64,000 nucleotides of DNA from Felis catus. Its lineage: Eukaryota. This document shows positions 4,297 to 52,726 of this stretch, in pieces (the stretch's first letter is position 1; each line of letters begins with the position of its first letter). The notes beneath the pieces are model-generated. The model made no database searches. It saw only the letters and a list, made by a program, of their open reading frames with translations, and was not told where the DNA came from. Position numbers and translations under genes: made by a program. Location of the stretch: NCBI RefSeq assembly GCF_018350175.1, contig NC_058386.1:126480001-126544000 (forward strand), read 5' to 3'.

Positions 4297-5461
4297 GTGA
4301 GGGCAGCAGACGAAGGCACGGGTGCCGTGGGCGTGGTGGTGGGCGCAGCAGGTGGTGGCCAGTGTGTGCCAGGTGGACCTCGTGGTGTCAGTGGCCCCAG
4401 AGTCCCTGGTGGTTCGGGTGGTGCCTGTGACCCTGGCCATCCCAGCAACCCCGGAGGCCTGAGCGATCCGGAAAGAACCAGCATTGTGGGAGAGGTAGGT
4501 GCCGCCGCTCTGGTGGCGCTCTCCAAATGGAGCGGGCGCCACCCTACACACCAGGTCCTGGTGGATGATGCCGCGCCTGGCGCTAGAGGTCCTGGAAACC
4601 GACTGCTTCAGTTGTATCCTATTCAAGGAGTCCCAGCGGGCTGGACGGCAGGGGGATGGGCTGGAGGTGGTCTGGCGCGCGGCGGGGTGGGGTGTGGGGG
4701 GGAGACTTGGGGAAGTGGAGTTGAAAGGGGAGCAGGAGGGAGCTCCGGGCACCTGGAGGGTATCGGCTAGGGTTTGGCCCGTGCTGACAGAGGATGGGGA
4801 GTGGGGTGGACCGCCTGATGGGGACTGAAGCGGTAGGGACAATGCTATCCGGGGTGGCCTGGCTGTATAGGGTGGGAGGTTGTGGACAGCCTGAGGGTCA
4901 GCCTGGGGTGGGGAAGGCAGGCCTCACTGAAGAGGAGGCCTGAGGCACAGGCAAAATTTAGTACTGTGGATGGTGCCTTAACCCAGTCTCCACCAGCACC
5001 CTCACTATACCTTTCCCCTCGGCCATGGATGCGGAGATTGCCCACAGGTTCCTGACTCCAAACGAGGAGCTCCAGGAGCCAGTTCGGGAGGAGCTCCATG
5101 TGAACGGCAGCATCCTGACTGTGTTAGTTCTAGAACGGTCCAGGGAGAGGGTGGTGGCAGGTGACCAGGGACAAGGTCAATTCCGGAGGAGCTGTAACGG
5201 AGACAAGGGAAACAGGAAAGGAGTGAGTCGAAGGAAGGAGTGTGGTGCTCTAGGATCGTTGCTGTGTGAAGGGGCGGAGCGGGGAATGTGCCCCACCGGC
5301 CCTCTAACTTGACTTATTTTTTCCTACCTCGTAGCCGCTTGACTGCCGATGACCCTGGCCAGCTCCAAATGTCCATCACCTCCTGTCTTGGCCAGCTTTC
5401 CCTAGTGATACGGGCCATGCAGATCATCATGCCCCCCTTTTTCACAAAGCCGCAGCAGTGA
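4297..5461 (+). CDS. CTAG1/CTAG2(NY-ESO-1/LAGE-1)-family gene A (Pcc1 domain); no in-frame ATG, GTG at homologous start; functional status uncertain
   Basis: Exons 4297-4613, 4997-5122, 5335-5461 splice to an open 189-aa frame. Exon 1 is Gly-rich and ends ARGPGNRLLQ(F). Exon 2 reads TLTIPFPSAMDAEIAHRFL...EELHVNGSILT. Exon 3 reads VRLTADDPGQLQMSITSCLGQLSLVIRAMQ. This resembles NY-ESO-1 ARGPESRLLEF...KEFTVSGNILTIRLTAADHRQLQLSISSCL. Both introns are phase 2. Confidence 0.7.
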
Positions 5462-6367
5462 AAAGGTGGCTGGACCCAACTCTGTGTCCCCCCCACATGA
5501 CAGTGATTCCTGCAGCAGCTGCCGTTTTCTTACTGAGGCCGCATCTTTTGCCTATACTGGCCCTTGGGTGCTTCAGATCCACATTTTTTTTTTTTTTTTT
5601 TTTTTTTTTTGGTGATCAAATGGTAACTGCTACTATTCTGTGTCTGGGTTTATTTTTAAAGCATCTACGCCTTCTCCTATTCTCGCCTTTGTTCTCAGGT
5701 AGGGGGAGAGATTCTGACATTCAGATACTCAAGTACTAGAAGGCAATTGAAGAAGACAAGTTAGGCGACGGGAGAAAAAAATTATGTCCTGTTATTCAGG
5801 ACATTAACTACTGTCAACATGTTAGAACTTTTGTTTTAGTTTTATACTAGCATGTACATAGTCATGTATAATACCTGCAGAGTAGGACTTTGTGGCTTCT
5901 CGGCCTTGATTCAGATCTGTGCAGAAGAGCGCTGGGACAGCTGGCTAGGTCGGCCCCACTGCCCATTCTATACTCCCGTGTCATCAGAGGCCTCATTCCC
6001 TGAGGTTCCGAACCCACAATTCTCAGAGCTCCTTGTGGTTGGCTCTCACTTGTATCATCCTTCCCCAAAGTGTTTTTCCAGTTTATTACGCTGCTGCTTG
6101 CTTCCCTGAAGTCCTGACAAGGGTCCTGGAGGAAAACAAAAAGGGGAAGAGGTCTCCCTGAGGTGGGGAGGGGACATGAAGTACATTACCCTTTGCCTTC
6201 CCCTCCAAGACTCTCTTATTTAGCACAACAGTGGGGCCACGTACAAGGCACCCGAGTGGCTGAGGAGGGGAATGGGCGACGCCCCGGTGCACGAGGTGAG
6301 TCTCTAAATCGGAGAGAGGAGGAACAGAGCCTTGCCTGAGGGAGAATTAGCAGTGTCAGCAGAGAGA

Positions 6368-6800
6368 GACTGAGCAGTGGAGAACGCCGTGACTCTATAG
6401 TTACGAATCTGTACCTGAGCGTCTCCAAATAGGTCCTCAGGACAAGTGAGGAAAGTAAAGGCACAGCTGCCTTGTCCTGGAGGCAGGTGTCACAGCAAGA
6501 AGGTGGCCAGTGTCTAGAGCGGCCTGTGGCTGGTGGAAGCATTTCAATGAGCAGTGTCACCAAAGAGCGCCTCAGCCTGAGCCTCGGACTGTCTCTGTCT
6601 GCCCTGTTCTTTGTCACTGCCTACGGGGCAGGCAGCTCTCATCTCCGGGCACGGGCAGGAGGAACCTGCAGCCGGAAAACAAGGATCTTTCAACACGTGC
6701 ACGTCTATAAACCCCGCCCTCGGCCGCCTCTCCAGCAGCTGCTGCCTCTCCAGCGGCTGCTCCCTCACCAATCGTCGCCACGCGCTGTGACGCGTGACCC
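6368..6800 (-). promoter_or_regulatory. Unidentified promoter-like element S (CCAAT, GC box, TATA-like); copies at 36840-37272 and 39790-40135
   Basis: On the mirror copy: ATTGG 36868-36872, GGGCGGGG 36921-36928 and TTTATA 36929-36934 in a CpG-rich setting. The third copy is truncated by L1. Confidence 0.4.
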
Positions 6801-7504
6801 CACTGCACCCACGCAAACCAGTCCCACCTCAGCTCCACCCCCTCCCCACACCCCTAGCCCCTCCCCAGACCTCGTGGGAGGCCGCCAGGCACCACGGCCT
6901 GTTGTCCAGAGGGCCCTGCCTCTTCCTTGGGCTCAGTGTCCCCAGCACGTGGGGCTCCACGACCTCGCAGCGGTTCGTGGAGGGAGATGGGCCACAGCCC
7001 AGACGGACACGGCCCCGCACCCCGTCCCCTTCCCCGGTACCGGTGGACACACCAAAGCGGCCTTTGGAGGGGGCGACTGAGCACAGGTGCGGATCAGATC
7101 GGCGGTCTGGGAAGGTCACGAAGGGGCTCCCGTCGGGGGGCAAGCCTGCCAGTAGCAGGCAAGGAGGAAAGGGATGGCGACTGGAGCTAAAGTAGTTAGT
7201 GGCCACGGAGAACAGGGATGCGGTCGCATAGGGAAAAACCACAGTGCAAAAGGGAAATCACTAAAATCCCAACTTAGGAAGCTACTGTATATGTGCACGG
7301 AAATCCTGCCACGGTAGCCTGAAGTGTAAACACCTCGTATGTCTGTGTGGTGGGATTGAGGGTGGTCCCCACTTCTTTTGTGTGCATTTCTCCCCCAAAA
7401 GGTTCAGAATGACTTTACATGACCTTTGGTGTTTTCAATTCTTTGACATCCTTGTGTGCGTGATCTCTACGCCCCACGTGGTGCGGCACTCACGACCCAG
7501 TGAG

Positions 7505-8610
7505 TGCTTCCACAAGTCAGGCTTGAGAGAGCAGATGATGCCATCCAGGGCGCCGGGCAGCAGCACTCCCCGCACCAACAGCACGACGAGGACCACGCAG
7601 GGGAAGGTAGCCGTGAAGTACACGATCTGGGGCGGGGGAGGGACGGGGGGGGTAACCTGCTCAGAAGGGGCCCTGCGGCCCCGCCTCCCCACTTAGGGGT
7701 CCCCAGCCTCAGCAGGGGGGCAGGCGGGCCACACTCCCCCCACTGTGGTACGGTCCACTCCGAGGTCAAGCGGGAGGCCAGCCTGCAGCCCCCCCTTCTA
7801 CTCCTCAGAGCCTGGGCTCCTCCCGAAGGAAGCGGGGTGCTCAGCTGGCCATCGGCTGCCCCCGCAAGGACAGGTCAGCTGTAGAGAGGGAGGGTGGAGG
7901 CAGGACCTTCCCCAGGTGGGGAGCAGGACATCGGCCTGGAGGCAGGTCCCATGCTTCCTGTGGTTCTCTGCACAGAGGCAGGGTCCTGGGCAGGACGGAG
8001 TGGACTGGGCCGGCCAGAGACAGAGGCGACAGCGAGGTGACCGCGAAGACCTCTGCCTCCGTCCCACCCTCAGCAGAGCAGGACAGGTAGGCAAAGGAGG
8101 GCCACGGGCCGGGTCCCCCCAGGCTGGCCGCAAAGCAGAGAGTGAGGAAGTAGTGAGTGAGGAAGAGAGGGAAACTGGGGCAGGGATGCCCGACACAGGC
8201 AAGTTCAGCTGGGGGTCGCCTGGGCCTGTCCCCTCAGGACGGAAGTCGGCTGGGCTGGAGTGTGGAGGTTGCGGAGCACTACCCAGGCACGCGTGGGAAA
8301 TCCACCGGGCTGGGTTCAAGGACCTGCCCCCGCCTCAGGCCCTGGCCCGGTCACCTCGCATGGCAGGGTCCACCTGCCCCCCCCTAGCGGAGACACCCCT
8401 TCTCCCCACCGGCCATGCTGCCCCCACCCCTGCCATCATCACCCACCCCGACCCGCCGGCCTCCAGCTGTACCTTTCCTGTTGACTTGACCCCCTTGCAG
8501 ACACAGAAGTAGGCCAGCACCCAGCAGGCCTGCAGACACAGGGTCACCTCCCAGTTGAGGGCCCCTGGCACGTCCAGCCCCCCCACCCCGAGAGCCGAAA
8601 GACTTTGTTC
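7505..8610 (-). pseudogene. SLC6A8: SLC6A8 (creatine transporter) fragment, exon 4 - intron 4 - most of exon 5
   Basis: Exon 4 at 8473-8610 ([36 protein letters not shown]) is 138 nt vs the canonical 133, so it is frameshifted. Exon 5 starts at 7626 ([31 protein letters not shown]) and breaks off before its donor. Confidence 0.93.
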
Positions 8611-9164
8611 CTGGGGGGAGGGGGGGACAGCCCGTCAGGGCTGCCGCAGCAGAGGGCAAAGCGACCGGGGAGCTGTCGCCGGGGCGGTGCTCCCCCGAGC
8701 CGCTGCCCTCAAGTCCAGGTGGGCCCCCCTGGGCCCCCGGCCCAAGCCCACAGCCATTGCAGTGGGAGGCAGGAGCCCGGGAGCCCCCGGCCGGAGGCCG
8801 GTCGCGCCCTCGGCGGTGTACCCTCCCCCAGGCTGGCAGGCACTAGGGGACTGACGGCGCCCGGGACCGACAAATGGTGAGGGAGCCAGGCCCATCCCTT
8901 CCAGCTCCCCTAGGGGCCGTGCGGGGTGTGCTCCCTGAGGACAGGCAGGGCCTGGGAGTGGCCCCTGCTCGGCATCCCGCGTAGGCCCCCCCCCCCGGCC
9001 CCCGGGTCGCAGGGCCCCCGGGACACGCAGACCCGAGCCGTACGGGGAGCCCACAGACAGGGACAGGCACGGTGCTGCCCAGAAGCGCCTGAGCGCGGCC
9101 CACGCCTCGATGCCCGGGACCGGGCGGGCGGCGGTCAGCTGGCTGCTGGCAAGTGCGCCCGGCT

Positions 9165-9398
9165 GGCGCCTGCGCAGACACAGGCTTGGGGGGAGGGGCG
9201 GGCCGGGCCGGAAACAGTCACGTGCCAGTGGCCTCACCAGAATGCTCTCGGGGACGTAGGAGCCCGACAGTGACGTCACGCGTCGGGGGGCGCAGCGTCC
9301 GGAACCAGCCTCCATCTCCTCGGGGTCAGCGTCGACCGGATCCAGGCTCTGCCGGCTCGGTGGCAACCAGCTCCGCGGGGTCTGTCTGCGCAGGCGCC
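9165..9398. promoter_or_regulatory. CpG-island promoter region of gene B (NRF1-like x2, GC box, E-box, full CRE); mirror 34238-34471
   Basis: GGCGCCTGCGCA 9165-9176, GTCACGTG 9217-9224, TGACGTCA 9271-9278, TGCGCAGGCGCC 9387-9398. Confidence 0.6.
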
Positions 9399-9524
9399 CT
9401 GGCCATCCCCGACAGCCTTGCGCGCCGAGGGGCCGGGCTTCGCGAGGCCTGCCAGGGGTCTCAGCGGTCGGCCGACAGTGGGCGCAGCGTAGCGGTGGGC
9501 TCTGAGGAGGCCGGTGCGGCGGCC

Positions 9525-10664
9525 ACGAGGGCCCCGGACGACGAAGCGGCCTCTCCGGCCCCGGACGACGGCGCGGAGGAAGTGGCGGTCACGCAGGCCC
9601 CTGACGATGACGGCGCGGACGGCGCGGCGGTCACGCGGGCTCCCGAGGGTGGCGCGGAGGACGCGGGGGCAGGCCCACAGGCCTCCGACGGAGGCACGGA
9701 CGGCCACGACCCCCAGCTTAGCCCCCGAGGTCCCGGTTGCCAGGGCAACTGCAGCCGCCACGATGGCGAGGGTGGCCCTGGCAGCAAGGGAGCAGTGGTC
9801 GAGGGGGCCTGCGCCCCTCCCCTGGCCGAACGGGCCCCGAGGGCCCTGGCCCCCGGTGGAGACGCAGCGCCGGCGGCGGCGGCGGTGACCTCCTCAGGAC
9901 TGCTGGAGTTGTATCCTTTCCGTGGAGCCTGTCTGGGCAGGGGCCGTGGCGGGGTGGCTGGGGAGCAGGGCGGCAGCCCGGGGACGGGACGGACGGGGGC
10001 GGGGGTGGGCAGCCTGGCGGGCCCCCAGGGTGGGGGAAGCGGCTCAGGGTGGGCAGAGGTGGCGGGAGGGAGCGCGAGTGTCCCGGGGGTAGAGGCGGGC
10101 CTCTGAGTGGTCAGGAGGCTTCAGGCCATGGGAACTCCAGGAGCCCGTTGTGCCTTAACCGGGTGCCTCCCAGCAGGCTCACTGTGTCTTTCCGGTCGCC
10201 CCTGGAGGCAGAGATGGCCCGCAGGGCCCTGACTACACACGTCCAACGCCACCGAGGGTTGGCTCAGAAGGAGCTTTGCGTGAGGGGCAGCGCCCTGGCC
10301 GTGTGAGTCCTCCAACAAGAGTATGCGCGGGACGGGTGGGCGGTGGCGGCGGGTGCCGTGGTCGCATCTCTGCCTTCCAGTGCCGTCGTGGAGGCCCCGA
10401 CGCACGCTGTTAGGTGGAAGGCGGGGGGGTGGGGGGTTGTGTGGGGGAAGGGGCTGGTGCCCTGCACCTCCACAGCAGGTCTCCCCTTTAACCGGATTTC
10501 CCTCTTCCCTCACTTCTAGGAGATGGACTACTGAAGACCCCATCTGCTTCCGAGTTTCCGTCAACTCCTTCTTGGACCGGCTTCCCCTGGTGATACGAAA
10601 CATTCGCGCCTTGGGGTCCCGGCCTCCGCGGCGCCTAGGTCCGGGAAAGGGGGCCGAGGCCTAA
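9525..10664 (+). CDS. LAGE3: LAGE3-like Pcc1-domain gene B; ACG at homologous start, no exon-1 ATG; functional status uncertain
   Basis: Exons 9525-9910, 10174-10302, 10520-10664 give an open 219-aa frame. Exons 2-3 read FRLTVSFRSPLEAEMARRAL...QKELCVRGSALAVRWTTEDPICFRVSVNSFLDRLPLVIRNI, resembling LAGE3 FTLSVPFPTPLEAEIAHGSL...VRWKAEDCRLLRISVINFLDQLSLVVRTM. It is convergent with a PLXNA3 3' end, as native LAGE3 is. Confidence 0.72.
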
Positions 10665-11955
10665 CCTGGTAGCCCTCACTGGGCAAGGCACGGGGCGTTG
10701 ACACTTGGCGTCCTCGCCACTTTACTATCGGGGGTCTAACGTTCTGCAGGTCCGGGCCTCGGTGGCTCTTGGCCCACTTCAGTTCCTTCCCTGCGCCCGG
10801 AGGGACGGGCGCTTACGTGTTTGTCACTGCACAACATGAAACTGAGCTACTCTTTTGTGTCCGAGTTTCTTCTCAGTTCCTGCGCCTCCACATTTTCTTA
10901 CCTTTGTTCTGGTGTTGGAAGGGAGGTTCTGGGAATCGTAGTCCAGCAGCCCAAGCTTATCGAAGACGACTCAGGGAGAGGAAAATCAGGTCCTATATTC
11001 AGCGGTAAATACTGCTGACGTTTTGGAATACGTTCCTAGTTGTATTTACCCGTTGAATGGATAGCAACGTATAACGTATCCATTTTCCAGTTTAGCGTTA
11101 ACTTTTCTCCGGATCCTTTTTGTTTCGTTTTGTTTTGTTTTTGTTTTTCCCCGTTGAACGTACTAGCTTTCCCACTCCCTAAAACCCTTCAAAAACTGTT
11201 ATCCAGGAGACACACAAATGTATTATTACATAATGTTGAGCAGTCGGGTCGTTCTCAGCTTTGCCCCTATTATGGGTCGTGTGAGTCAATGGGATTCTTG
11301 AACAGAAGTCTTTGCGCGAACAGTTACTTCCTTCAGATCGTTTCCAAGAGGTAGAATTCCCGCGTTCTATAGCTTCTCGGCACACAAGTGCTCTCCAGAA
11401 AAGGCGCCCCGCCGGCAGAAGTCTGGTCTCCCCGCATCACCAACCAGTAGGGTGGCTTCCTACCGAAGTAGAAGACTCCTTTTGTACCAGGGAAATAAGC
11501 ACGGAAACACTAGAATAGGAATTTTGGGGCTTACTGGCCTTGTTTCCGATGAGCAAGGGGGTGGTGCCACAAGTGGCTACGGGTTTGGGGGCGGGGTGGG
11601 GGGTGGTTAGCTCCCTCTGAGTAGCTTGTGTCTTGGAACCTCGCTAAACAGGAGTGCTAGCCTCACGAGGGTTCCCTCGGAGTTTCTACATGCATGGTCG
11701 TGATCTCTGCAAGCAAACACGGTTTTGGTTCCTTCCTTTCCGGCCTTGCCGGGGCTACGGGGGCGGGGGGAGGGAACAGGCTGACACTGGACAGATGGGA
11801 AGCAAGAGCAGGAAGGCACATGGCAGAGAACCAAATCCTGGATCCAGCCACGCCTGAAGACAGAACTATCCGCCCCCCGCCCCCGCCACAATCGTTCAGT
11901 TACACACATCCAGAAACTCTCCCTTTGGTTAAGCCAACATGAATCCTTTTTTTCT

Positions 11956-11995
<40 letters not shown>

Positions 11996-12019
11996 TCCCT
12001 TTCTCTTTTGTTTGAATGC

Positions 12020-12224
12020 TTTTATTTAGTGTTTGAGAGCAAGACAGAGACAGCGTGAGCGGGGAAGGGGCAGAGAGACAGAGAGGGAGACACAGAATCT
12101 GAGGCAGACTGCAGGCTCTGAGCTGTCGGCACAGAGCTCGACGCAGGGCTCAAACCCACGAACTGTGAGATCGTGACCTGAGCCGAAGTCAGACCCTCAA
12201 CCGACTGAGCCACCCAGGCACCCC
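12020..12224 (-). mobile_element. CanSINE (feliform type); mirror 31436-31640
   Basis: Contains gagatcgtgacctgagccgaagtcagaccctcaaccgactgagccacccaggcacc. Confidence 0.9.
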
Positions 12225-14481
12225 CGTCGTGAATACTTTTTTTTGCTTTTCTTTTTGTCTGTCTTCACTTGTAATAGAAAAGTCTTGTCCTTTATTGACT
12301 CGAGGAACCGTAGGTTTTCTTGTCACTTCACCTGAGAACGTGGCTCTCCCTTCTTTTAACGGAGAAACTGGGCTCTTTAAGTTTACAAAGGCATTGGCTC
12401 CTAGCTGGTAGGCCTTCAAGCCGTATGGTGGTAGAGTCTTCTGTGGGTAAGAGTCCAGAGAGGGAGGGGAGGGACTGCAAGGGGCAGCTGGAGGAAAGGG
12501 ACAAAGAGAAGGGGCACTGGGACCCACCCTTTCCGGATAGGGCTCCCAAGACTGGCCCGGAATTGTGGGGCCAGATCGTCAAGAGACCGGAACTTAGTGT
12601 GAGCCTCCCTCCCTCTCCCAGCAAAGCCCAGAGTTAGGCCACCGCCCTGGCCCCACAGACGGACTGCTGAAGGCGCCGGGCGGCCTTAACACGTCAGTCA
12701 GGTCACAAAACAAGTCGATTCCAACGCGTCCCCGGGCTCCCCTCCCAGAGACGAGCCAGAGCCCTGCCCCGCGGCCCGCCGCGTCAGATGTGATCCGGCC
12801 CGCATCTTCCACGGCCTCCTTCCCTCCCCTCTCCACCTTGCTCACTCTCGGATCCAGCCACACTGGCCTCCTCCCTTCTCTGAAACACACCAGGCCCAGG
12901 CCTGCCTCAGGACCCTTGCACTGCCTCTTCCCTGCCTGGACCTCTCGTCCCCCGGGGTTCCATCTGGCCCACTCAAATAGCATTCCTGGCCGCTCTCCTT
13001 AAGGTTGCGTCCCACGCTCTCCCCACCTGCATTACTTTCACAGGTGTCGGGGGGTAAGAAGCAGGTGGGCCCGTCAGCATGGAGGTGCACGTGCGGCAGT
13101 AAAGCGTCGTGGGACACGAAGGAGCTTGGGTGCTGTCGATGACCCTAGGGAGTCTTGAACGGAGCGGGACGGGATGCAGCTTACGTCTTATCAGGTTCCC
13201 GGTGCCTGCTGCGCTGGGAAGGGGACGAGGGCAGGCAGGACAGAAGTGGGGAGACTGGCACGCAGGCGAGAGACCCCCAGGCTGCGGCCAGTGGAGGTGG
13301 GGAGAAGGGAACGGGTTCCGACCGGATCTTGACGGGAGAGCCACCGGGGTTTGCTGGCACGGATCGGACGTGGCCCTGGACCTCCTCAGATGCGCGGGAC
13401 CCGTGCAACGGGTCACCCTTCCTCCCACAAAGGGAGCCCAGCTCCTCCAGAGTCCAACAGCCTCCCCACCTGCCTCCCTGCTCGCCGACCACCCACCTGC
13501 CACACACTGCCACCGTTTTCCCGACGTTTAATTCAGAAACAAGGTTCCAGGAACAACGACAAAGAAGCTCATGCCAAAACAGAGGGGACAGCTGGGTTTC
13601 CGGGACCACGCGCCGGGGCCAGATTCCTCGGAGGGGGAAGAGGGAACAGAGGGGTAAGGCACTGCCGCCTCGGCCACTCGGGGCGGGCGCAGGACAGGGC
13701 AGCGGGGGTGAGGGGTCCGGGCTGAGCGGGCACCACGCCGAGGAAGCTGGGCGCTCGGGCCTGGAGAAGGAGACTTCCAGAGCCCCCAGGCCCACGTGGG
13801 GCCCTGGCACGAACCCGCTCATAGCTCCCCAGGTGCTGGGGACAGGGCGCCCGAGAAAGGTACGGTCCGACCCCCGAGAAGTCCGGAGGGGATGCCGGGA
13901 CCCAGCCGCGGGGAGACCCCTGGGCGCAGCCACAGTCTGGGGACGGCTTCGCCGCATCACCCTGGGCGCCCCCCTCCTCGCCATCAAGTGCTGCTGGTGT
14001 CGGGGGCCCCTGCTCGGACCCGGCGGGGCCGGCCACGGCCAGGGGCAGGTGCCAGAGGCGAGGCCGAGGCTGACCGTGCCACCAGGGAGCCAGGACGACC
14101 CAAGGACAGAAGGGGCGTGAGGTTGTCCACATCCCAGAGAAGGGGCACGTGGTGACAGACGGACACGGTGAGGTGCAGATAAATTAAATAAATAGGTGGT
14201 TGGGGGTATAAACAGGAAGAGGGGGCAGGGGCTGGCACGACCCGGGGGCACGAGGGTGGGAGGGCGGGGATATTGCTGCTGCCAGGTCAGGACCCTTGGT
14301 CCCGTCACCATCGCCCCCACGCAGGGCCCAAAGAAAGGCACTAATGAAGGGGGCCCGGGTGTGCGCAGGGCACGAGAGTCCGGTGACCACCCCATCCCCG
14401 CCCCCGTGCCACCCGATCCAGGGCTCGGCCCCGAGGTCATCTCAGGCCTGGGACGCCCCCTCCTCACCGGTTCCGCCACCC

Positions 14482-14577
14482 TTAGCTGTTGCCGGACAAG
14501 AGGCTGATGGTCTGTTCCAGGTTTTGCCCCAACTTAGGCTTCCGACAGGAGGCGTCTCGGTCCAGAGCGGTGAGGAC
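14482..14577 (-). pseudogene. PLXNA3: PLXNA3 terminal coding exon, orphan duplicate (3'UTR-derived sequence continues to lower coordinates)
   Basis: Preceded by a pyrimidine-rich acceptor. VLTALDRDASCRKPKLGQNLEQTISLLSGNS* vs recalled human PLXNA3 C-terminus ILTALDRDASCRKHKLRQKLEQIISLVSSDS* (23/31 identical). No upstream PLXNA3 exon recognised. Confidence 0.85.
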
Positions 14578-14869
14578 CTGGGGGAGGAGGGCCCCCCCGG
14601 AGCCGGGCTGGCGAGGAGGGGCCGCTCCCTCCCTTGCCAAGCCGTCCTCCCCTGCCTGAGCTCTTTTGTCCCTCCTGCGTCCACGCACCCCGCTCTCTGC
14701 GGGTCCCCGGCACGTGGGAAGGGCTGCAGCCCCCCACCTCTGCACACGCTGCGACTTGGCCACCCCGAAGCCACCGCCTTCTCTGCTCGGCGGCCACAGT
14801 GCGGCCCTTCCCGGGAGTGGTTTGGACCCGCTGTCCCCAAACGCCCCGTCCCCTCCTGGCCCACACCCC

Positions 14870-16330
14870 ATCTCCCCATCCCCTCCTGAACCCCAAACCC
14901 GCACATGATCTCCCCGTCCCCTACTGACCCGGAATCTGGACCCAACCTCCAGGTCCCCCCCTGACCCCACCCCACACCCAATGTCGCTATCCCCTCCGGA
15001 CCCCATCTGCACCCCGCACCCGATCACCTTGTCCCATCCTGACCCCCACCCGACACCCAAATTTCCCAGCCCCTCCTGACCCCACCTTGCACCCAACATC
15101 CACGTACCCTGCTGACCCCCACCCCGCACCCCAAATCCCCATCCACTCCCGATCCGGAATCGGCACCCAACCTCCAGATCCCACCTGACCCCCACCCTCC
15201 ACCCAATCTCGCCATCCCCTCCTGACTCCCACTGACACCCCGCACCCGATCACCTGGTCCCTTCCTTAACCCCACCCGACACCCGAATTTCCCGGTCCGT
15301 CCTGACCCCACCCCGCACCCAAGCCCCATCCCCTCCTGAACCCCAACCCCACACCTGATCTCCCCATCTGCTACTGACCTGGAATCTGCACCCAACCTCT
15401 GCGTCCCCTCCTGACCCCCACTCCTGCCAAGCACCCGATCACTTCGTTCTCTCTTGTCCCCCACCGCCACCCTGCACCTGATTTCCCCGTCCCCTCCTGA
15501 CTCTTACCCTGAACCCGATCTCCCTCTCACCCCCTGACCCCCCCGCCACACCCCACCTCCCCATCCAATCCTGATCCCCACCCCTACCTGGCACCCGATC
15601 TCCATGACTCCTCACACCCACCCCTCCACTCACCTTGCTGGACACTCGTGATTCCCACTCCACACCTGATATTCCTGTGTCCTCCTGACCCCCACCCTAC
15701 CCCCCATCCAACCTCCGCCATCCTCTTGACCCCCACTGCCCACTCAACCTCCACGCCCCACCTGGCCCCCACCCCACACCCCAAATCCCCATCCACTCCC
15801 GATCCGGAATCTGCACCCAACCTCCAGTTCCCACCTGACCCCCACTCTGCACCCAACCTCCCATCCCCTCCTGACCCTCATCCCATACCCGACCTCCCTG
15901 TCCCGTCCTGACCCCTACTCCTCCCCTGACCTCCTCATCCACTCCTGACCCCCAACCCTACCGAGCACCCGATCTCCCTGACTCCTCCTGACCCCCACCC
16001 CCCACCCAACTTCCCGGTCCCTTCCCGACTGCCACCCCGCACCTGACATTCCTGTGTCCTCCTGACACACACCCCCACCCCGCACCCGAGTTCCTTATCC
16101 CCTCCAGACCTCCAGCCCGCACCCCTTGCCAAACCTTCCCGTCTCCTCCTGACCCCCACCCTGCACCCCGTACCCCATCTCCTCATCGCCTCCTGACTCC
16201 ACCTCGCACCTGGTCTCCCCGTCCCCTCCGGAACCACACCTCACATCCCATCTCCCTGCCCCCTCCCAACTCCCACCCTGCGCCTGACTTCCTCGACCCC
16301 TCCTGACCCTCACCCCACACCCGACCCTGT
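14870..16330. repeat. C-rich (G-rich on minus) degenerate minisatellite
   Basis: Dozens of variant units built on CCTCCTGACCCCCACCCCGCACCC(GATC/AA) and CCGGAATCTGCACCCAACCTCCAG modules. Confidence 0.92.
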
Positions 16331-19718: not shown

Positions 19719-19763
<45 letters not shown>

Positions 19764-20592
19764 TTAAGGAACAAAAGGCTAAAAGAGCCCCTTGCCATCT
19801 TTATAGCCCAGGAATGTGTTCTTCAAGGACCTGGGAAACATCTCTTTGGAATGTAAACATCAAGCAAGATTGTGTCCCGATCTTCAGTTTCTGTGGGAGG
19901 GTAGAAGCCTAACTTCAGTAGGCACCTTGCTCCAAGTTGCAAAACTAGCTCCTGTCATAAAGATATGAAAAAGCTTATTTTTTCCTTGGATAAAGCCGAT
20001 TAATTGTATTAGTCTGCTCAAGCTGCTATAGCAAAGTACCTCACACTGGGTGGCTTACACAGCAGAAATTTATTTTCTCACAGTTCTGGATGCTAGAAGT
20101 CCATGATCAAGGTGCCAGCAAATTCAGCTTCTGGTGAGAATTTGCTTCCTTGCTTGTAGAGGTCCACCTTCTCCTCTGTCCTCACATGGCCTCTCCTCAG
20201 TGCAGGTGAGGAGAGAGCGGGGGAGTAGGGGCGGGGAGGGAGGGAGAGGAAGAGGGGGGGTGCTCTCTGGTGTCTCTCTTATAAGGACACCACTCTTATT
20301 GGACCAGAGCCCCATTCTTATGACCTCATTTAAACTTACTTCCTCAAAGGTCCCATCTCCGAATACAGCCACACTGGGGTTTAGGGCTTCAGCATATTAA
20401 TGTGGGGGAGGGAACACAAACGCACCGTCTGAAACAGCCACGACCTAATACACACGGCCACCCCAGTTCCCAGGGAAATTCAGGATGGACTATGTGCGGG
20501 GCCTGGTGGCGTCACGTCCTCTTACTTGAGGTCTACTTATGGTGGATGTTGAGAACACGTGATGAGCTCTACCCGCTTACCTATACAAAAGG
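17028..20592. repeat. Inverted repeat 1, right arm
   Basis: Reverse complement of 1-3549. Differences seen are mainly microsatellite and homopolymer lengths. Confidence 0.97.
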
Positions 20593-23744: not shown

Positions 23745-24844
23745 TCAGCCCCCTTTTCCAGGCCGAGGCCTAGAAAAAATCGCGGGCACCAAGTGCTGCA
23801 TGGTCTGCACCACCATGAAAAGCTGGTTGAGCAAGGAGGCGGTGGAAATCTGCAGGAGGACAGGGTCTTCAGCAGTTAGTCGGCTAAAAGTAAGGGGAAA
23901 AGGAAATCACTTTAGATTTGAGAACTCCTGGCCCTCCTCACTCCAATCTCCCCCCTCAAGGTTACTCCTCCGTGTCTCCCTTAGAGCAACCCCTGAGGCT
24001 GCCACAGACCCGGGGCCCCATGTGCCTCCTTAGACCAAGCCCTTGGTGTCTGCACATCTCCAACCGAAGTGTCCGTCGGGCAGAGGTTACCTCAGCTCCC
24101 ACTGCCTCCCGCCAGCCCCTTCTAGAACTTACATAAACAAGTCACTGCCAATCACTGTGAGCTCCGTGTGAACCGCTTCGTGGTAGCATTCGGCACTCGA
24201 GGTCAGGTACTGGTAGGTCAGCTCCGCATCCACGTAACACAGGAAAGGCACCGTGAGGGCACTGGTGGACATTCGGTTAAGGCACATCTGGGTGGACCTC
24301 ATGGAGGAGGCTTCCTTGCCCATCGGAGGCCCGCCTTCCCCCAGACCGCCCTTAGGGCCACCCAAGACCACCTCGGCCGCCCCTTCAGGAAACGTGCATC
24401 ACGGCACCCCCAGCTGCTTCCTCCAGCCTCCCTCAGCCCCCCCCCACCACTTCCCTTCTGTGCCCCCGCAAGTCCCCGAAACCTCTCCCGCCCATCCAAC
24501 GGGGCCCCCACCTGCCTCCCCTCCCAGCCATTCCCCACTGCCCCCCCGACCTCGGGAGCTCCTTGGAAAGGATACAATTCCAACACTTGCTTTTCTGAGG
24601 CTTCCCCGGAGGCCGAGGCCGAGGCCGAAGCCTCTCCCCCCTGCCTTGGGGAGGGCGATGCCCCCTCGACCTGGGGAGCTTCCCCAGCCACGGTGCCCGA
24701 CGTCGCGGTGCCGTCCCGGCCTCCGGGATTTCCGGGGCCACTGGACGAGCCAGCACTACCCGTCGCACCACCGGCGCCGTCGTCCAGGATCTGCGCGCCG
24801 TCCGCGCCGTCCGCGCCGTCCGCACCGTCGCCCGGGGCCTGCAT
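23745..24844 (-). CDS. CTAG1/CTAG2-family gene C, intact, 178 aa
   Basis: ATG at 24844 (MQAPGDGADGADG...). Exons 24576-24844, 24133-24261, 23745-23883. Exons 2-3 read FALTVPFLCYVDAELTYQYL...TELTVIGSDLFIRLTAEDPVLLQISTASLLNQLFMVVQTMQ. AATAAA lies at 23581-23586 (minus) and an NRF1-like site at 24967-24978. Confidence 0.9.
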
Positions 24845-26277: not shown

Positions 26278-26476
26278 ATCTATCTATCTATCATCTAATC
26301 TGAATGAANNNNNNNNNNNNNNNNNNNNNNNNNNNNNNNNNNNNNNNNNNNNNNNNNNNNNNNNNNNNNNNNNNNNNNNNNNNNNNNNNNNNNNNNNNNN
26401 NNNNNNNNNNNNNNNNNNNNNNNNNNNNNNNNNNNNNNNNNNNNNNNNNNNNNNNNNNNNNNNNNNNNNNNNNNNN

Positions 26477-32971: not shown

Positions 32972-34111
32972 TTAGGCCTCGGCCCCCTTTCCCGGACCTA
33001 GGCGCCGCGGAGGCCGGGACCCCAAGGCGCGAATGTTTCGTATCACCAGGGGAAGCCGGTCCAAGAAGGAGTTGACGGAAACTCGGAAGCAGATGGGGTC
33101 TTCAGTAGTCCATCTCCTAGAAGTGAGGGAAGAGGGAAATCCGGTTAAAGGGGAGACCTGCTGTGGAGGTGCAGGGCACCAGCCCCTTCCCCCACACAAC
33201 CCCCCACCCCCCCGCCTTCCACCTAACAGCGTGCGTCGGGGCCTCCACGACGGCACTGGAAGGCAGAGATGCGACCACGGCACCCGCCGCCACCGCCCAC
33301 CCGTCCCGCGCATACTCTTGTTGGAGGACTCACACGGCCAGGGCGCTGCCCCTCACGCAAAGCTCCTTCTGAGCCAACCCTCGGTGGCGTTGGACGTGTG
33401 TAGTCAGGGCCCTGCGGGCCATCTCTGCCTCCAGGGGCGACCGGAAAGACACAGTGAGCCTGCTGGGAGGCACCCGGTTAAGGCACAACGGGCTCCTGGA
33501 GTTCCCATGGCCTGAAGCCTCCTGACCACTCAGAGGCCCGCCTCTACCCCCGGGACACTCGCGCTCCCTCCCGCCACCTCTGCCCACCCTGAGCCGCTTC
33601 CCCCACCCTGGGGGCCCGCCAGGCTGCCCACCCCCGCCCCCGTCCATCCCGTCCCCGGGCTGCCGCCCTGCTCCCCAGCCACCCCGCCACGGCCCCTGCC
33701 CAGACAGGCTCCACGGAAAGGATACAACTCCAGCAGTCCTGAGGAGGTCACCGCCGCCGCCGCCGGCGCTGCGTCTCCACCGGGGGCCAGGGCCCTCGGG
33801 GCCCGTTCGGCCAGGGGAGGGGCGCAGGCCCCCTCGACCACTGCTCCCTTGCTGCCAGGGCCACCCTCGCCATCGTGGCGGCTGCAGTTGCCCTGGCAAC
33901 CGGGACCTCGGGGGCTAAGCTGGGGGTCGTGGCCGTCCGTGCCTCCGTCGGAGGCCTGTGGGCCTGCCCCCGCGTCCTCCGCGCCACCCTCGGGAGCCCG
34001 CGTGACCGCCGCGCCGTCCGCGCCGTCATCGTCAGGGGCCTGCGTGACCGCCACTTCCTCCGCGCCGTCGTCCGGGGCCGGAGAGGCCGCTTCGTCGTCC
34101 GGGGCCCTCGT
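32972..34111 (-). CDS. LAGE3: LAGE3-like gene B' (mirror of B); ACG at homologous start
   Basis: Exons 33726-34111, 33334-33462, 32972-33116 with the same spliced protein as B. It has a private ATG in intron 1 at 33647. Confidence 0.72.
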
Positions 34112-38177: not shown

Positions 38178-39334
38178 TCACTGCTGCGGCTTTGTGAAAA
38201 AGGGGGGCATGATGATCTGCATGGCCCGTATCACTAGGGAAAGCTGGCCAAGACAGGAGGTGATGGACATTTGGAGCTGGCCAGGGTCATCGGCAGTCAA
38301 GCGGCTACGAGGTAGGAAAAAATAAGTCAAGTTAGAGGGCCGGTGGGGCACATTCCCCGCTCCGCCCCTTCACACAGCAACGATCCTAGAGCACCACACT
38401 CCTTCCTTCGACTCACTCCTTTCCTGTTTCCCTTGTCTCCGTTACAGCTCCTCCGGAATTGACCTTGTCCCTGGTCACCTGCCACCACCCTCTCCCTGGA
38501 CCGTTCTAGAACTAACACAGTCAGGATGCTGCCGTTCACATGGAGCTCCTCCCGAACTGGCTCCTGGAGCTCCTCGTTTGGAGTCAGGAACCTGTGGGCA
38601 ATCTCCGCATCCATGGCCGAGGGGAAAGGTATAGTGAGGGTGCTGGTGGAGACTGGGTTAAGGCACCATCCACAGTACTAATTTTGCCTGTGCCTCAGGC
38701 CTCCTCTTCAGTGAGGCCTGCCTTCCCCACCCCAGGCTGACCCTCAGGCTGTCCACAACCTCCCACCCTATACAGCCAGGCCACCCCGGATAGCATTGTC
38801 CCTACCGCTTCAGTCCCATCAGGCGGTCCACCCCACTCCCCATCCTCTGTCAGCACGGGCCAAACCCTAGCCGATACCCTCCAGGTGCCCGGAGCTCCCT
38901 CCTGCTCCCCTTTCAACTCCACTTCCCCAAGTCTCCCCCCCACACCCCACCCCGCCGCGCGCCAGACCACCTCCAGCCCATCCCCCTGCCGTCCAGCCCG
39001 CTGGGACTCCTTGAATAGGATACAACTGAAGCAGTCGGTTACCAGGACCTCTAGCGCCAGGCGCGGCATCTCCACCAGGACCTGGTGTGTAGGGTGCCCG
39101 CTCCATTTGGAGAGCGCCACCAGAGGCGGCACCTACCTCTCCCACAATGCTGGTTCTTTCCGGATCGCTCAGGCCTCCGGGGTTGCTGGGATGGCCAGGG
39201 TCACAGGCACCACCCGAACCACCAGGGACTCTGGGGCCACTGACACCACGAGGTCCACCTGGCACACACTGGCCACCACCTGCTGCGCCCACCACCACGC
39301 CCACGGCACCCGTGCCTTCGTCTGCTGCCCTCAC
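38178..39334 (-). CDS. CTAG-family gene A' (mirror of A); GTG at homologous start plus an in-frame internal ATG at 39106
   Basis: Exons 39024-39334, 38517-38642, 38178-38304. Gives 187 aa from GTG, or 111 aa from ATG 39106 (MERAPYTPGPGGDAAPGARGPGNRLLQF...). Confidence 0.75.
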
Positions 39335-40135
39335 GGGGCCTCCACCAGCCACCTGAGACCCAACTTTGAATCCGCCCACCCTCTCAAGGCATCACTGAAG
39401 GACAAAGCGCTCTCTCACAATGCTTCACCCCTTTACTCCACAATGCAATTCCGGATGCCCAGAGCAACTGTCCACACGGACCACTGGTAATGCCTCCTGA
39501 CCTGTGATTGGTTCCCACCAAGCAGTCCCTTCTGTAGCCAATCAGTTCTCACCTATGAAGCTCCACCCCTTAGAGTGCCACGACACCCTAGGGCGTCTGC
39601 CCAAATGGGCACCCGCGTCGATGCGTCTGCCTGAACCAGCCGTGCCACGAGCCTTCGACGGCCCGCCAGCTGCGATATCCAGGAAGCCTCTGCCTGACAC
39701 TACTCCCCACACGGTGGTGCGGCTCATGGTCCCCACTGTCCATGCCCAAACAGACTGCCATGGCCCAACTCCTAAAGCCTCTGAGCACGTGACTGAGCTG
39801 TGTAGAACTCCGTGACTCTATAGTCACGAATCTGTACCTGAGCGTCTCCGAATAGGTCCTCAGGACAAGTGAGGAAAGTAAAGGCACAGCTGCCTTGTCC
39901 TGGAGGCAGGTGTCACAGCAAGAAGGTGGCCAGTGTCTAGAGCGGCCTGTGGCTGGTGGAAGCATTTCAATGAGCAGTGTCACCAAAGAGCGCCTCAGCC
40001 TGAGCCTCGGACTGTCTCTGTCTGCCCTGTTCTTTGTCACTGTCTACGGGGCAGGCAGCTCTCATCTCCGGGCACGGGCAGGAGGAACCTGCAGCCGGAA
40101 AACAAGGATCTTTCAACACATGCGTGTCTATAAAC

Positions 40136-47096: not shown

Positions 47097-47678
47097 TCAA
47101 CGAGGAGTGTCCCCGGCTCAGGAGTTTCTCACATCCGAATGTGCTCCCAGTGCTAGGTGCCTGTCAGTCTCCACCTGCTCCACACCCCACCCTCGTCGCA
47201 CACTGGATGCCATATGGATCCCTCCCTGTACAATGTATTACACGAAGGCACCAATTTTGCTGTGGACCAGAGCCAGGCTGTGACGTTTGCATTGGACATG
47301 GCAAGGGGCATGGCCCTCGTACACACTCTAGAGCCCCTCATCCCACGACACGCGCTCAGCAGCCGTAGTGTAATGATTGATGAGGACATGACTGCCCGAA
47401 CCAGCACGGCCGACGTCAGGTTCTCCTTCCAATGCCCTGGGCGCAGGTATGCACCTGCCTGGNNNNNNNNNNNNNNNNNNNNNNNNNNNNNNNNNNNNNN
47501 NNNNNNNNNNNNNNNNNNNNNNNNNNNNNNNNNNNNNNNNNNNNNNNNNNNNNNNNNNNNNNNNNNNNNNNNNNNNNNNNNNNNNNNNNNNNNNATTGGA
47601 ATGAAGGTGGCACTGGAAGGCCTTCGGCCTACCATCCCACCAGGCATTTCCCCCCATGTGTGTAAGCTCATGAAGATC
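47097..47678 (+). pseudogene. ILK: ILK processed pseudogene fragment (pseudokinase domain)
   Basis: Intronless [30 protein letters not shown]...[26 protein letters not shown]...[28 protein letters not shown], with a 4-nt frameshift near 47220 and a gap inside. Confidence 0.95.
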
Positions 47679-50078: not shown

Positions 50079-50115
<37 letters not shown>

Positions 50116-51085: not shown

Positions 51086-51265
51086 CAAGAAAAAGTTAAA
51101 AACCCTCCAGTACAGAATAGAACTATAAACAAGAATTCAGTGAAGCAATGAGGAAGGAAAGTATTTTCAATTACTTTGGCCAAGATTTGGTATCTTTGTA
51201 TATAAAGAGCATTCACCAATCAATAAGTAAAATATGACTATTCCAATTGAAAAATTAATCAACGA

Positions 51266-51418
51266 GGGCCGCCTGGGTGGCTCAGTCAGGTAAGCACCTG
51301 AGTCGGTTTCGGCTCAGGTCATGATCTCACGGTTGGTGGGTTCAAGCACTGCGTCGGGCTCTGCACTCACAGCGCAGGAACTGCTTGGGTTCTCTCTCTC
51401 TCTCTGCCTTCTCCCCTT
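51266..51418 (+). mobile_element. CanSINE, 3'-truncated, abutting the 3' end of gene D
   Basis: Starts gggccgcctgggtggctcagtcagg...ggctcaggtcatgatctcac and has no A tail. Confidence 0.85.
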
Positions 51419-51611
51419 GCTCTGACACTGTAGCTGAAAATACACTCAGATGCGGAAAAATAGTTTTATTTTCTGCTGTAAGAACGCCCCTCCTCCAGCA
51501 ATGGGGAAAAACAAGGCCCAAAGTCCAATACGAACAATTAGACCCCCGTAATAAAGCGGCAACCAGCATCGGAATGGACGCCCTAGGGAAGGAAGGGACG
51601 CTAGGTTACAA

Positions 51612-52726
51612 TTAGCCCCTTTTGCCTGGCTCCGGCAATGTGAAAAACGGGGGCACGAAGCGCTGCATGGTCCAAACCAACAGGGAAAGCTGGTCAAGAC
51701 AGGAGGCGATGGAAACCTGGAGTTGGCCAGGGTCTTCGGCAGTCAGTCGGCTAAAAGTGAGGGAAAAAGAAAATCCAAATGAAATGTCATCACTCTTGCC
51801 CCTATCTCTCTGCCCCCCCTCAGGTGGCCGCAGGCTCAGGGTGCCACACCTACCTCTTTGGACCTAACCTTTGGTGTCTCCAATTCACTATTAGAACGGC
51901 CCTCAGGAGATAGGCCCTAGCGACCTGACACCACCCCCCACGAGGGACCCGTTTGGAACTAACATAATTAGGACGTTGCCGAGTACCGTGAACTCCTTCC
52001 GAACTGCCCCGACCTGGGGCTGGCCCTGTGTTGCCAGACACTGGTGGGCCACCTGTGCCTCCGTGGGTGACGGGAAAGGCATGGTGACGTAGCTGGTAGC
52101 CATTCGGTTAAGGCATCATCGAAAACCGATCGCGTCGGTGCCTCAGGCGTCCTGACCACTCCGAGGCCTGCTTTCCCCACGGCCACTCTCCCCCCTCTCC
52201 ATCCTCTCCGGTCCGCTCCCCTCCTTGCTGGTCCATCAGGCCGCCTCTCCCCGCCACCCCTCCCGGCCACCCCTGGCCCATCCGCCCCCCGGGCCGGTCC
52301 CTCCGGTGCCCCGGTCCCCCCCTCCCCTCCTTGCCCTGGACCCCCAGGCTGAACCCCCTCCCCTCCGCTCCCCGCCCCGTCGCCTCCTCTAGGCCCATCG
52401 CCCCGGCCACCCGCCACTCGGCCAAGAGGATACAACTGCAGCGGCTGGCTCCCCGGCCCTCCGGCTGTGGGCCCGCTGTGCCCACGGGGTCCCGGCAAAG
52501 GGTGTCCGCCAAGCCCTGGCACGGCAGCTGCGCCCGGGACGGGAGCACATGGCGCCTGCGCGACCCGCGGGGCCGCACCGGCCGCGGCACACTCCTCTCC
52601 CTCACCACCTCCACCGCCGGGGCCCTCGTGGCCTCCGGGGCCATCTGGGACACCGGGGTCTCCCGGGCCACGCTGACCCTCGGGACCGCCGGCCCCACCG
52701 CCTGCGCCTCGATCTGTGGCCTCCAT
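51612..52726 (-). CDS. CTAG1B: CTAG1 (NY-ESO-1)-like gene D, intact, 186 aa
   Basis: Strong Kozak ggaaccATGG at 52726. Exons 52434-52726, 51964-52092, 51612-51750. Reads MEATDRGAGG...PGDPGVPDGPGG; FYVTMPFPSPTEAQVAHQCL...RKEFTVLGNVLIIRLTAEDPGQLQVSIASCLDQLSLLVWTMQRFVP, the closest match here to NY-ESO-1. AATAAA lies at 51465-51470 (minus). Confidence 0.93.

What the first reader, a model, noticed from the sequence alone, without database searches (positions are those of the whole stretch)
4614..52433. Intron 1 of every CTAG/LAGE copy is a U12-type (minor spliceosome) GT-AG intron with invariant geometry
Seen: donors are GTATCCTATT (A, 4614), GTATCCTTTC (B, 9911; C, 24575 minus) and GTATCCTCTT (D, 52433 minus). 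Each has a GCCTTAAC branch box (4975-4982, 10152-10159, 24276-24283, 52107-52114) followed by exactly 12 nt and then AG, with no polypyrimidine tract. Intron 2 is ordinary U2 in all copies. Established: RTATCCT and CCTTAAC close to the 3' site define U12 introns, which splice slowly and are often retained. Inference: perfect retention in the ATG-less A and B, despite massive coding divergence, argues that they are or recently were spliced under selection. The whole family may be gated by minor-spliceosome activity.
Basis: partly seen in the sequence, partly recalled or inferred. Interest (0 to 1): 0.8.

Follow-up and report, generated by a model that had tools for sequence, protein, structure and literature searches.

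The report
Known U12 intron in CTAG/LAGE3 genes
The first intron of every CTAG/LAGE3-type gene copy in this window does carry textbook minor-spliceosome (U12-type) signals, but the same intron is already catalogued as a minor intron in human and mouse LAGE3, CTAG1A/B and CTAG2, so this is an inherited, known feature.

Summary
GTATCCT donors and a GCCTTAAC box sit 12 nt before AG, with no pyrimidine tract, and intron 2 is ordinary U2-type. The window holds six Pcc1-domain genes: A, B, C and D, plus palindrome mirrors A' (donor 39023) and B' (donor 33725). None touches an N gap.

Genome-wide, 21 loci of the four types keep the same signals. The true LAGE3 orthologue and its duplicate have 13 nt, not 12. 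The 17 signal positions are invariant across five paralogue types, while the intron interior is about 50% identical and coding dN/dS is 0.6-1.2. Two processed pseudogenes lack intron 1 exactly at the predicted junctions.

This is not new. The Minor Intron Database tables (Olthof 2019) list human LAGE3, CTAG1A, CTAG1B and CTAG2, and mouse Lage3, Ctag2, Gm6880 and Gm6890, as minor-intron genes. Identical 12-mers there score 93-98 (5' site) and 83 (branch site).

"ATG-less" holds for B-type copies but not for A-type, where 5 of 6 copies have an in-frame ATG. Gating of the family by the minor spliceosome remains untested.

The parts
4240..4613 (+). Copy A exon 1: open frame ending TT| (phase 2). 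This copy has no in-frame ATG.
4614..4996 (+). Copy A intron 1, U12-type GT-AG, 383 nt. Donor GTATCCTAT; GCCTTAAC at 4975-4982, then 12 nt, then AG.
4997..5461 (+). Copy A exon 2 (4997-5122), U2-type intron 2 (5123-5334, GTTAGT...TCGTAG) and exon 3 coding part (5335-5461). Encodes the Pcc1 domain.
9093..9910 (+). Copy B exon 1 open frame, LAGE3-like. No in-frame ATG in any of the seven B-type copies in the genome.
9911..10173 (+). Copy B intron 1, U12-type GT-AG, 263 nt. Donor GTATCCTTT; GCCTTAAC at 10152-10159, then 12 nt, then AG. A second in-frame AG lies 3 nt further on.
10174..10664 (+). Copy B exon 2 (10174-10302), U2-type intron 2 (10303-10519, GTGAGT) and exon 3 coding part (10520-10664). 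Encodes the Pcc1 domain.
24262..24575 (-). Copy C intron 1, U12-type GT-AG, 314 nt. Donor ATT|GTATCCTTT at 24575; GCCTTAAC at 24283-24276, then 12 nt, then AG.
23745..24844 (-). Copy C gene. ATG at 24844; exon 1 runs to 24576; exon 2 24261-24133; U2-type intron 2 24132-23884 (GTAAGT); exon 3 coding part 23883-23745.
52093..52433 (-). Copy D intron 1, U12-type GT-AG, 341 nt. Donor GTT|GTATCCTCT at 52433; GCCTTAAC at 52114-52107, then 12 nt, then AG.
51612..52726 (-). Copy D gene, CTAG/NY-ESO-like. ATG at 52726; exon 1 runs to 52434; exon 2 52092-51964; U2-type intron 2 51963-51751 (GTTAGT); exon 3 coding part 51750-51612.
38643..39023 (-). Its exon 1 has an in-frame ATG at 39106.
33463..33725 (-).

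Best explanation
Intron 1 of all six Pcc1-domain (LAGE3/CTAG family) genes in the window is a U12-type GT-AG intron. It was inherited from the ancestral LAGE3 gene. Every duplication carried it along into an X-linked, palindromic, multi-copy cancer/testis-type cluster.

Proposed mechanism (inferred): the donor /GTATCCT is recognised by U11 and U6atac, and the box CCTTAAC pairs with U12 snRNA with one A bulged as branch point. The AG 14-15 nt downstream is used without a pyrimidine tract. The splice joins TT| to the first base of exon 2 to make the Phe codon that opens the Pcc1 domain.

The major spliceosome has no usable donor or pyrimidine tract here. Any copy that must express its Pcc1 domain therefore depends on these about 17 nucleotides. 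That dependence explains why they stay invariant while the rest of the intron and the coding sequence drift.

Shown: the signals, their conservation, their identity to catalogued minor introns, and past precise splicing. Inferred: dependence on the minor spliceosome in this species, and present-day splicing of A and B.
For: Signals and geometry are present in all six copies. They are also present in all 21 A-, B-, C- and D-type loci in the genome and, with 13-nt spacing, in the LAGE3 orthologue L009 and its duplicate L010.

Pfam Pcc1 (PF09341) matches all four types, E = 1e-10 to 9e-19.

Olthof 2019 (PMC6717393), Tables S1 and S2, lists human LAGE3, CTAG1A, CTAG1B and CTAG2, and mouse Lage3, Ctag2, Gm6880 and Gm6890, as minor-intron genes. 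Identical 12-mers are scored there:
- GTTGTATCCTTT (same as B): 93.6.
- GTTGTATCCTCT (same as D): 93.6.
- ATTGTATCCTTT (same as C): 96.6 and 98.3.
- Branch-site 12-mer TGTGCCTTAACC (same as B and C): 82.7.
The thresholds are above 50 for the 5' site and above 65 for the branch site.

Across five paralogue types, 17 of 17 signal columns are invariant. In the interior, 30 of 164 ungapped columns are invariant, mean pairwise identity is 0.50, and the longest invariant run is 3. Chance expectation is 0.005 against 6 observed.

Processed pseudogenes L011 (LAGE3-type) and L031 (CTAG A-like) join exon 1 to exon 2 exactly at the predicted junction.

Mouse Lage3 is named as a minor-intron gene downregulated in the Rnu11 knockout (bioRxiv 10.1101/2021.03.05.434172).

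Small 'organism A' runs (111-137 million letters) hold 0.56-0.57 of the words of the D gene stretch. That is about its exon share, which fits spliced mRNA. This is an inference.
Against: There is no perturbation of the minor spliceosome.

The published scoring matrices were not run directly. Scores are carried over from identical or near-identical 12-mers. A's 5' 12-mer and the branch-site 12-mers of A and D are not in the table.

The branch box has G rather than the consensus T before CCTTAAC.

Copies within a type are 99-100% identical, so only about five lineages are independent.

Coding dN/dS near 1, together with the missing ATG in B, leaves open that some copies are now pseudogenes whose signals are relics.
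Confidence: 0.9

Rival explanations
1. In A and B the signals are relics. These copies are silent or unprocessed pseudogenes. Their U12 motifs persist only because too little time has passed, or because of copying between paralogues, not because they are spliced under selection.
For: B-type copies have no in-frame ATG in any of seven copies. dN/dS of B against every other type is 0.77-1.17 and never significantly below 1. Copies within a type are 99-100% identical, which indicates recent amplification. No RNA evidence was obtained for A or B.
Against: The intron interior of B is only 47-59% identical to the other types, yet all 17 signal positions are intact. Gene conversion would homogenise whole tracts, not islands of 7-8 nt.

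Exons 2-3 remain open in all types. Five of six A-type copies have an ATG. An A-like retrocopy shows that this lineage was spliced in the germline.
Confidence: 0.3
2. The introns look like U12-type but are removed by the major spliceosome. They would be 'minor-like' or hybrid introns.
For: They are GT-AG, not AT-AC. The branch box is 7 of 8 to consensus. In human CTAG1A/B the donor has decayed to GTATTCT, 5' score 64.7. This shows that the family can tolerate weaker U12 donors.
Against: The donors match the U2 consensus CAG|GTRAGT only at GTA. There is no pyrimidine tract, 53-55% against 70-78% in intron 2. Identical 12-mers were classed as minor under criteria that require the U12 score to exceed the U2 score. 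Mouse Lage3 falls when U11 is removed.
Confidence: 0.05
3. The repeated motif pair is a by-product of assembly duplication of one gene, so 'every copy' is one observation.
For: A/A' and B/B' are 99-100% identical palindrome arms. An unplaced contig, C56, repeats the whole set. Gaps interrupt the region.
Against: A, B, C, D and E are deeply diverged: synonymous divergence (dS) is 0.38-0.73, and protein and intron sequences differ strongly. At least five independent lineages therefore carry the signals, whatever the true copy number.
Confidence: 0.03

Closest known systems
Minor (U12-type) intron 1 of human LAGE3 and mouse Lage3, as listed in the Minor Intron Database (Olthof et al. 2019, PMC6717393, Tables S1 and S2)
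   Same: Same gene family (Pcc1 domain) and GT-AG subtype. The donor is ATT|GTATCCT. The human branch-site 12-mer GGCACCTTAACC compares with GGTACCTTAACC in the orthologue here (L009). Intron length is 316 nt in human and 322 nt in mouse, against about 313 nt here.
   Different: The window itself does not contain the orthologue, which lies about 136 kb upstream on the same contig. The window's LAGE3-like B copies have GCCTTAAC, 12-nt spacing, a tandem acceptor and no ATG.
Minor introns of human CTAG2, CTAG1A and CTAG1B (NY-ESO-1/LAGE-1) and mouse Ctag2, Gm6880 and Gm6890, in the same database
   Same: Same intron and the same signals. Human CTAG2 has GTT|GTATCCTGT with GGCACCTTAACT. CTAG1A/B has GATGCCTTAACT. 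Mouse Gm6880 has GTTGTATCCTTT with GGTGCCTTAACA. The genes are X-linked, duplicated and testis-restricted in expression (Table S3).
   Different: Human CTAG1A/B has a decayed donor, GTATTCT, scoring 64.7. Every copy here keeps GTATCCT. Copy number here is much higher: at least 21 loci of four types, plus two LAGE3-type loci. The introns are shorter, 263-383 nt against 615-676 nt in the human CTAG genes.
U12-type GT-AG introns in general (/RTATCCTTT donor, TCCTTAAC branch site close to the 3' site, no pyrimidine tract)
   Same: All the defining sequence features are met (see the membership test).
   Different: Nothing structural differs. The interior is unusually G-rich: 45-52% G and 19-22 G-runs per intron.

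Membership tests
U12-type (minor spliceosome) GT-AG intron | 5' splice site /RTATCCT(T) directly at the exon boundary | tested here: met
   GTATCCT is present in all six window copies and in all 23 genomic loci examined. The 12-mers of B, C and D are identical to catalogued minor introns that score 93.6-98.3. A's 12-mer differs from those only at +8, a position at which identical scores are printed for different bases.
U12-type (minor spliceosome) GT-AG intron | Branch-site box TCCTTAAC-like (score above 65 in the Olthof/Sheth scheme) | tested here: met
   GCCTTAAC is present in all window copies. TGTGCCTTAACC (B and C) is printed with 82.7. The near-identical GGTGCCTTAACA scores 80.3 and GATGCCTTAACT scores 83.7. 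The exact 12-mers of A and D are not in the table.
U12-type (minor spliceosome) GT-AG intron | Branch site close to the 3' splice site (optimum quoted as 11-13 nt; searched within 40 nt) | tested here: met
   There are 12 nt between the box and AG, so the second A lies 15 nt before the last intron base. The LAGE3 orthologue has 13 nt. The range is quoted from PMC6717393. The spacing is slightly longer than the quoted optimum.
U12-type (minor spliceosome) GT-AG intron | No polypyrimidine tract; poor match to the U2-type donor | tested here: met
   The last 40 nt are 53-55% pyrimidine, against 70-78% in intron 2 of the same genes. The donor shares only GTA with GTRAGT.
U12-type (minor spliceosome) GT-AG intron | The intron is actually removed at these sites | tested here: met
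   This is met historically. Processed pseudogenes L011 and L031 join the exons exactly at the predicted junction. Present-day RNA reads were not obtained. The word shares of the runs fit spliced D mRNA, but that is only an inference.
U12-type (minor spliceosome) GT-AG intron | Splicing depends on U11/U12/U4atac/U6atac | not testable with these tools
   The only evidence is by homology. Mouse Lage3 is named as a minor-intron gene downregulated in the Rnu11 conditional knockout.
Pcc1/LAGE3/CTAG protein family (PF09341) | Pcc1 domain above Pfam's gathering score | tested here: met
   Exons 2+3 of A, B, C and D score 42-68 bits against a cut-off of 20.9 and cover the whole 75-position profile.

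The most novel reading that the evidence does not exclude
In this species a whole multi-copy X-linked cancer/testis family (at least 21 loci of four diverged types, plus two LAGE3-type loci) has kept a perfect U12 donor and branch site while its coding sequence evolves at dN/dS of about 1. In three of the four types (A, B, C), retention of the short intron meets a stop inside the intron; in D it shifts the frame. In each case the Pcc1 domain is lost. Minor-spliceosome activity, for example U6atac level in germ cells, could therefore act as a common post-transcriptional switch for the family. The start-codon-less B copies might then work as spliced RNAs or from non-AUG starts.
Probability: 0.15. 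Interest if true: 0.5.

Novelty: already known. Interest (0 to 1): 0.2.

Why it matters
As a discovery it matters little. The LAGE3/CTAG minor intron is already listed for human and mouse, and duplicates inheriting it is expected.

Two modest points remain:
- The cluster is a natural experiment. Five diverged lineages have near-neutral coding change but 17 of 17 invariant U12 signal positions. This argues that expression of these genes still requires this one splice.
- Gene annotation of such clusters must allow U12-type introns, or exon 1 will be mis-joined.

The idea that minor-spliceosome activity gates cancer/testis antigens is testable but unsupported so far.

Tried and rejected
After that call no letters of 8532-8577 were sent to any search tool.

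2. Full-text searches for LAGE3, CTAG2 or CTAG1B together with U12 or minor intron found no paper that discusses the family. One preprint names Lage3 as a minor-intron gene. The evidence sits in supplementary tables. The 2026 U11 spermatogenesis paper does not mention Ctag2 or Lage3 in its main text.

3. My first dN/dS run used a wrong intron-2 acceptor for the LAGE3-type copies. It was redone.

4. I did not run the published U12/U2 matrices, which are not on the closed machine. I relied on printed scores of identical 12-mers.

5. I did not look up the spliced proteins in the protein collections. They have no single DNA reference, and typing them was ruled out.

6. L012 (contig C46) matched only the G-rich intron interior and has no family coding sequence, so it was dropped.

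7. The scan's own notes held nothing on U12.
Full report
**1. What is in the sequence**

Reading the four places and scanning both strands confirms every coordinate in the finding.

- Copy A: the exon ends ...CAGTT and the intron starts GTATCCTATT at 4614. GCCTTAAC is at 4975-4982, followed by CCAGTCTCCACC and then AG, so the intron ends at 4996.
- Copy B: GTATCCTTTC at 9911, box at 10152-10159, intron ends at 10173.
- Copy C (minus strand): GTATCCTTTC at 24575, box at 24283-24276, intron ends at 24262.
- Copy D (minus strand): GTATCCTCTT at 52433, box at 52114-52107, intron ends at 52093.

The spliced reading frame joins TT| to the first base of exon 2, giving Phe, and continues into an open exon 2 and exon 3 in every copy. 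Exons 2+3 of each type match Pfam Pcc1 (PF09341) over the whole profile, with E from 1e-10 to 9e-19.

Intron 2 has GTTAGT, GTGAGT or GTAAGT donors. Its last 40 nt are 70-78% pyrimidine, against 53-55% for intron 1.

**2.

The same scan finds two more copies.

- A' has its donor at 39023 and its box at 38664-38657.
- B' has its donor at 33725 and its box at 33484-33477.

They are the mirror arm of a palindrome, with arms at about 4175-15003 and 28657-39456 and 99-100% identity. The window therefore holds six genes of four types.

The N runs are at 3570-4069, 26309-26476, 47463-47594 and 60536-60697. None lies in an exon or intron of any copy. The two gaps flagged by the scan's program fall between genes, so continuity across them does not bear on the claim. 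They were not filled or looked up.

**3. More than chance**

In 200 first-order Markov simulations of the window, the combination of an RTATCCT donor, a CCTTAAC box within 60-1000 nt, and AG exactly 12 nt later occurred 0.005 times on average. The observed count is 6, from four independent paralogue types.

**4. The family in the whole genome**

BLAST of each type against the window's own assembly and a motif scan of the loci give these counts.

| Type | Loci | Donor | Box and spacing |
|---|---|---|---|
| A | 6 | GTATCCT | GCCTTAAC + 12 nt + AG |
| B | 7 | GTATCCT | GCCTTAAC + 12 nt + AG |
| C | 4 | GTATCCT | GCCTTAAC + 12 nt + AG |
| D | 4 | GTATCCT | GCCTTAAC + 12 nt + AG |
| E (L009, L010) | 2 | ATT\|GTATCCTAG | ACCTTAAC + 13 nt + AG |

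- The loci lie at about 126.45-126.69 Mb of contig C47 and on the unplaced contig C56.
- The fifth type, E, is L009 at C47:126.34 Mb and its duplicate L010.
- L009 is the true LAGE3 orthologue. Its exon 3 reads RWRAENSRLLRISIINFLDQLSLVIRTMQRFGPPVSR.
- The intron is therefore family-wide, but the "exactly 12 nt" geometry is not.

**5. Conservation pattern**

I aligned intron 1 of A, B, C, D, E and E2, the L010 duplicate of E, and counted conservation over A-E, leaving E2 out as too close to E. The 7 donor positions, the 8 positions of CCTTAACC and the terminal AG are all invariant, 17 of 17.

In the interior, mean pairwise identity is 0.50. Only 30 of 164 ungapped columns are invariant, and no invariant run exceeds 3.

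The coding exons evolve fast. Nei-Gojobori dN/dS between types is 0.59-1.17 and is not significantly below 1 in any pair.

The splice signals are therefore the best-conserved part of these genes. This is what is expected if each lineage was expressed through this one splice for most of its history. Gene conversion cannot produce islands of 7-8 nt.

**6. Fossil proof of splicing**

Two processed pseudogenes were found.

- L011 (C47:78.38 Mb) is LAGE3-type.
- L031 (contig C2:18.67 Mb) is CTAG-type and closest to A in exons 1-2. Exon 2 is interrupted by a purine-rich microsatellite.

Both lack both introns. At intron 1 the join is exact:

- L011 reads ...ACACATTT/ACCCTCTGCATGCC, against E's ...ACATATT|CGCCCTCGGCGTGCC.
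- L031 reads ...CTGCTCCAATC/CACCCTCATCATGCC, against A's ...CTGCTTCAGTT|CACCCTCACTATACC.

The predicted GT...AG sites were therefore used in the germline in both the LAGE3 and the CTAG branches.

**7. Comparison with what is known**

Olthof et al. 2019 (PMC6717393) classify introns with the SpliceRack matrices. One of their alternative criteria is a U12 GT-AG 5' score above 50 that exceeds the other 5' matrices by at least 10, together with a branch-site score above 65.

Their Table S1 (minor intron coordinates) and Table S2 (orthologues) list human LAGE3, CTAG1A, CTAG1B and CTAG2, and mouse Lage3, Ctag2, Gm6880 and Gm6890, as minor-intron genes.

Printed 12-mers identical to those here carry these scores.

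| 12-mer | Same as | Score |
|---|---|---|
| GTTGTATCCTTT | B 5' site | 93.6 |
| GTTGTATCCTCT | D 5' site | 93.6 |
| ATTGTATCCTTT | C 5' site | 96.6 / 98.3 |
| TGTGCCTTAACC | B and C branch site | 82.7 |

- A's 5' 12-mer GTTGTATCCTAT differs from these only at +8, where the printed scores do not change.
- The branch-site 12-mers of A and D differ by one flanking base from entries scoring 80.3 and 83.7.
- A preprint names mouse Lage3 as a minor-intron gene that is downregulated when U11 is deleted (10.1101/2021.03.05.434172).

No open paper discusses the family as such, but the feature itself is catalogued. I rate it as already known.

**8. The inference about A and B**

B-type copies have no in-frame ATG in any of seven copies, and their dN/dS against all other types is about 1. 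B may be a pseudogene, or it may use a non-AUG start, as another note of the scan suggests.

"ATG-less A" is true only of the window's copy A. A' and four other A-type copies have an in-frame ATG 83 nt before the donor, reading MERAPYTPG.... The cause is three small deletions relative to A, at 4506-4507, 4537-4539 and 4566. The A-like retrocopy L031 follows A's frame in this stretch.

Past selection on splicing is well supported (sections 5 and 6). Present splicing of A and B is not shown.

**9. RNA evidence**

The look-up of sequencing runs on the D gene (51400-52900) listed several runs of the same organism that hold 0.56-0.61 of the sampled words. Three of them have only 111-137 million letters.

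Such small runs cannot cover a single locus as genomic DNA. The share is close to the exon share of the stretch, which I estimate at about 0.54. This fits spliced D mRNA. One run at 0.77 would fit exons plus intron 1. All of this is inference only.

**10. Mechanism and the 'gating' idea**

Retention of intron 1 runs into a stop inside the intron in A, B and C. In D it shifts the frame through exon 2. This follows from the open frames 4252-4770, 9153-10106, 24880-24299 and 53248-51968, and in each case the Pcc1 domain is lost.

Olthof et al. report that retained minor introns are shorter than non-retained ones, and these introns are short, at 263-383 nt.

A dependence of the family's output on minor-spliceosome activity is therefore plausible. 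It is also the generic expectation for any minor-intron gene, and it was not tested here.

**Verdict**

The U12 interpretation is supported, and the feature is inherited and already catalogued in human and mouse. Interest is low.

Noticed in passing
window 1-40135: There are two overlapping palindromes. Arms at about 4175-15003 and 28657-39456 (99-100% identical) are centred near 21818. Arms at 1-3417 and 17179-20592 (98-100%) are centred near 10296, inside gene B. Copy C lies between arms.
   Followed up: partly
G000 contig C47 126.34-126.69 Mb and unplaced contig C56 (loci L001-L030): The family is multi-copy: A-type 6 loci, B-type 7, C-type 4, D-type 4 and LAGE3-type 2. Identity within a type is 98-100%. 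C56 repeats the whole set and may be an alternative assembly of the same region.
   Followed up: partly
L011 (C47:78.38 Mb) and L031 (C2:18.67 Mb): These are two processed pseudogenes of the family with stops. L031 carries a purine-rich (GGA/GAA) microsatellite of about 430 nt inserted in exon 2.
   Followed up: yes
window 4506-4566 versus 39130-39070: Copy A differs from A' and from four other A-type copies by three small indels (2, 3 and 1 nt). These shift about 60 nt of the exon 1 frame, and only the majority form has an in-frame ATG (39106 in A'). The old retrocopy L031 follows A's frame. This may be a real variant or a polishing error.
   Followed up: partly
window 10169-10176 and 33467-33460: B and B' have a tandem acceptor, CCCAG|CAG. 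Both AGs keep the frame, so products may differ by one codon.
   Followed up: no
window 7630-8384 versus 53757-54510: About 750 nt upstream of B and upstream of D are 93-97% identical, in inverted orientation. B and D therefore share upstream flank, or a common repeat, although their genes are far more diverged.
   Followed up: no
window 3570-4069: A 500-N run ends 170 nt before A's open frame, so the promoter and 5' end of copy A cannot be read. It was not filled from other copies.
   Followed up: no
intron 1 of all copies (e.g. 4614-4996, 52093-52433): The intron interiors are 45-52% G on the sense strand, with 19-22 runs of three or more Gs each. In D the exon 1 frame stays open through the whole intron (ORF 53248-51968).
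   Followed up: no
I worked beside it afterwards and sent none of its letters to any search tool.
   Followed up: no
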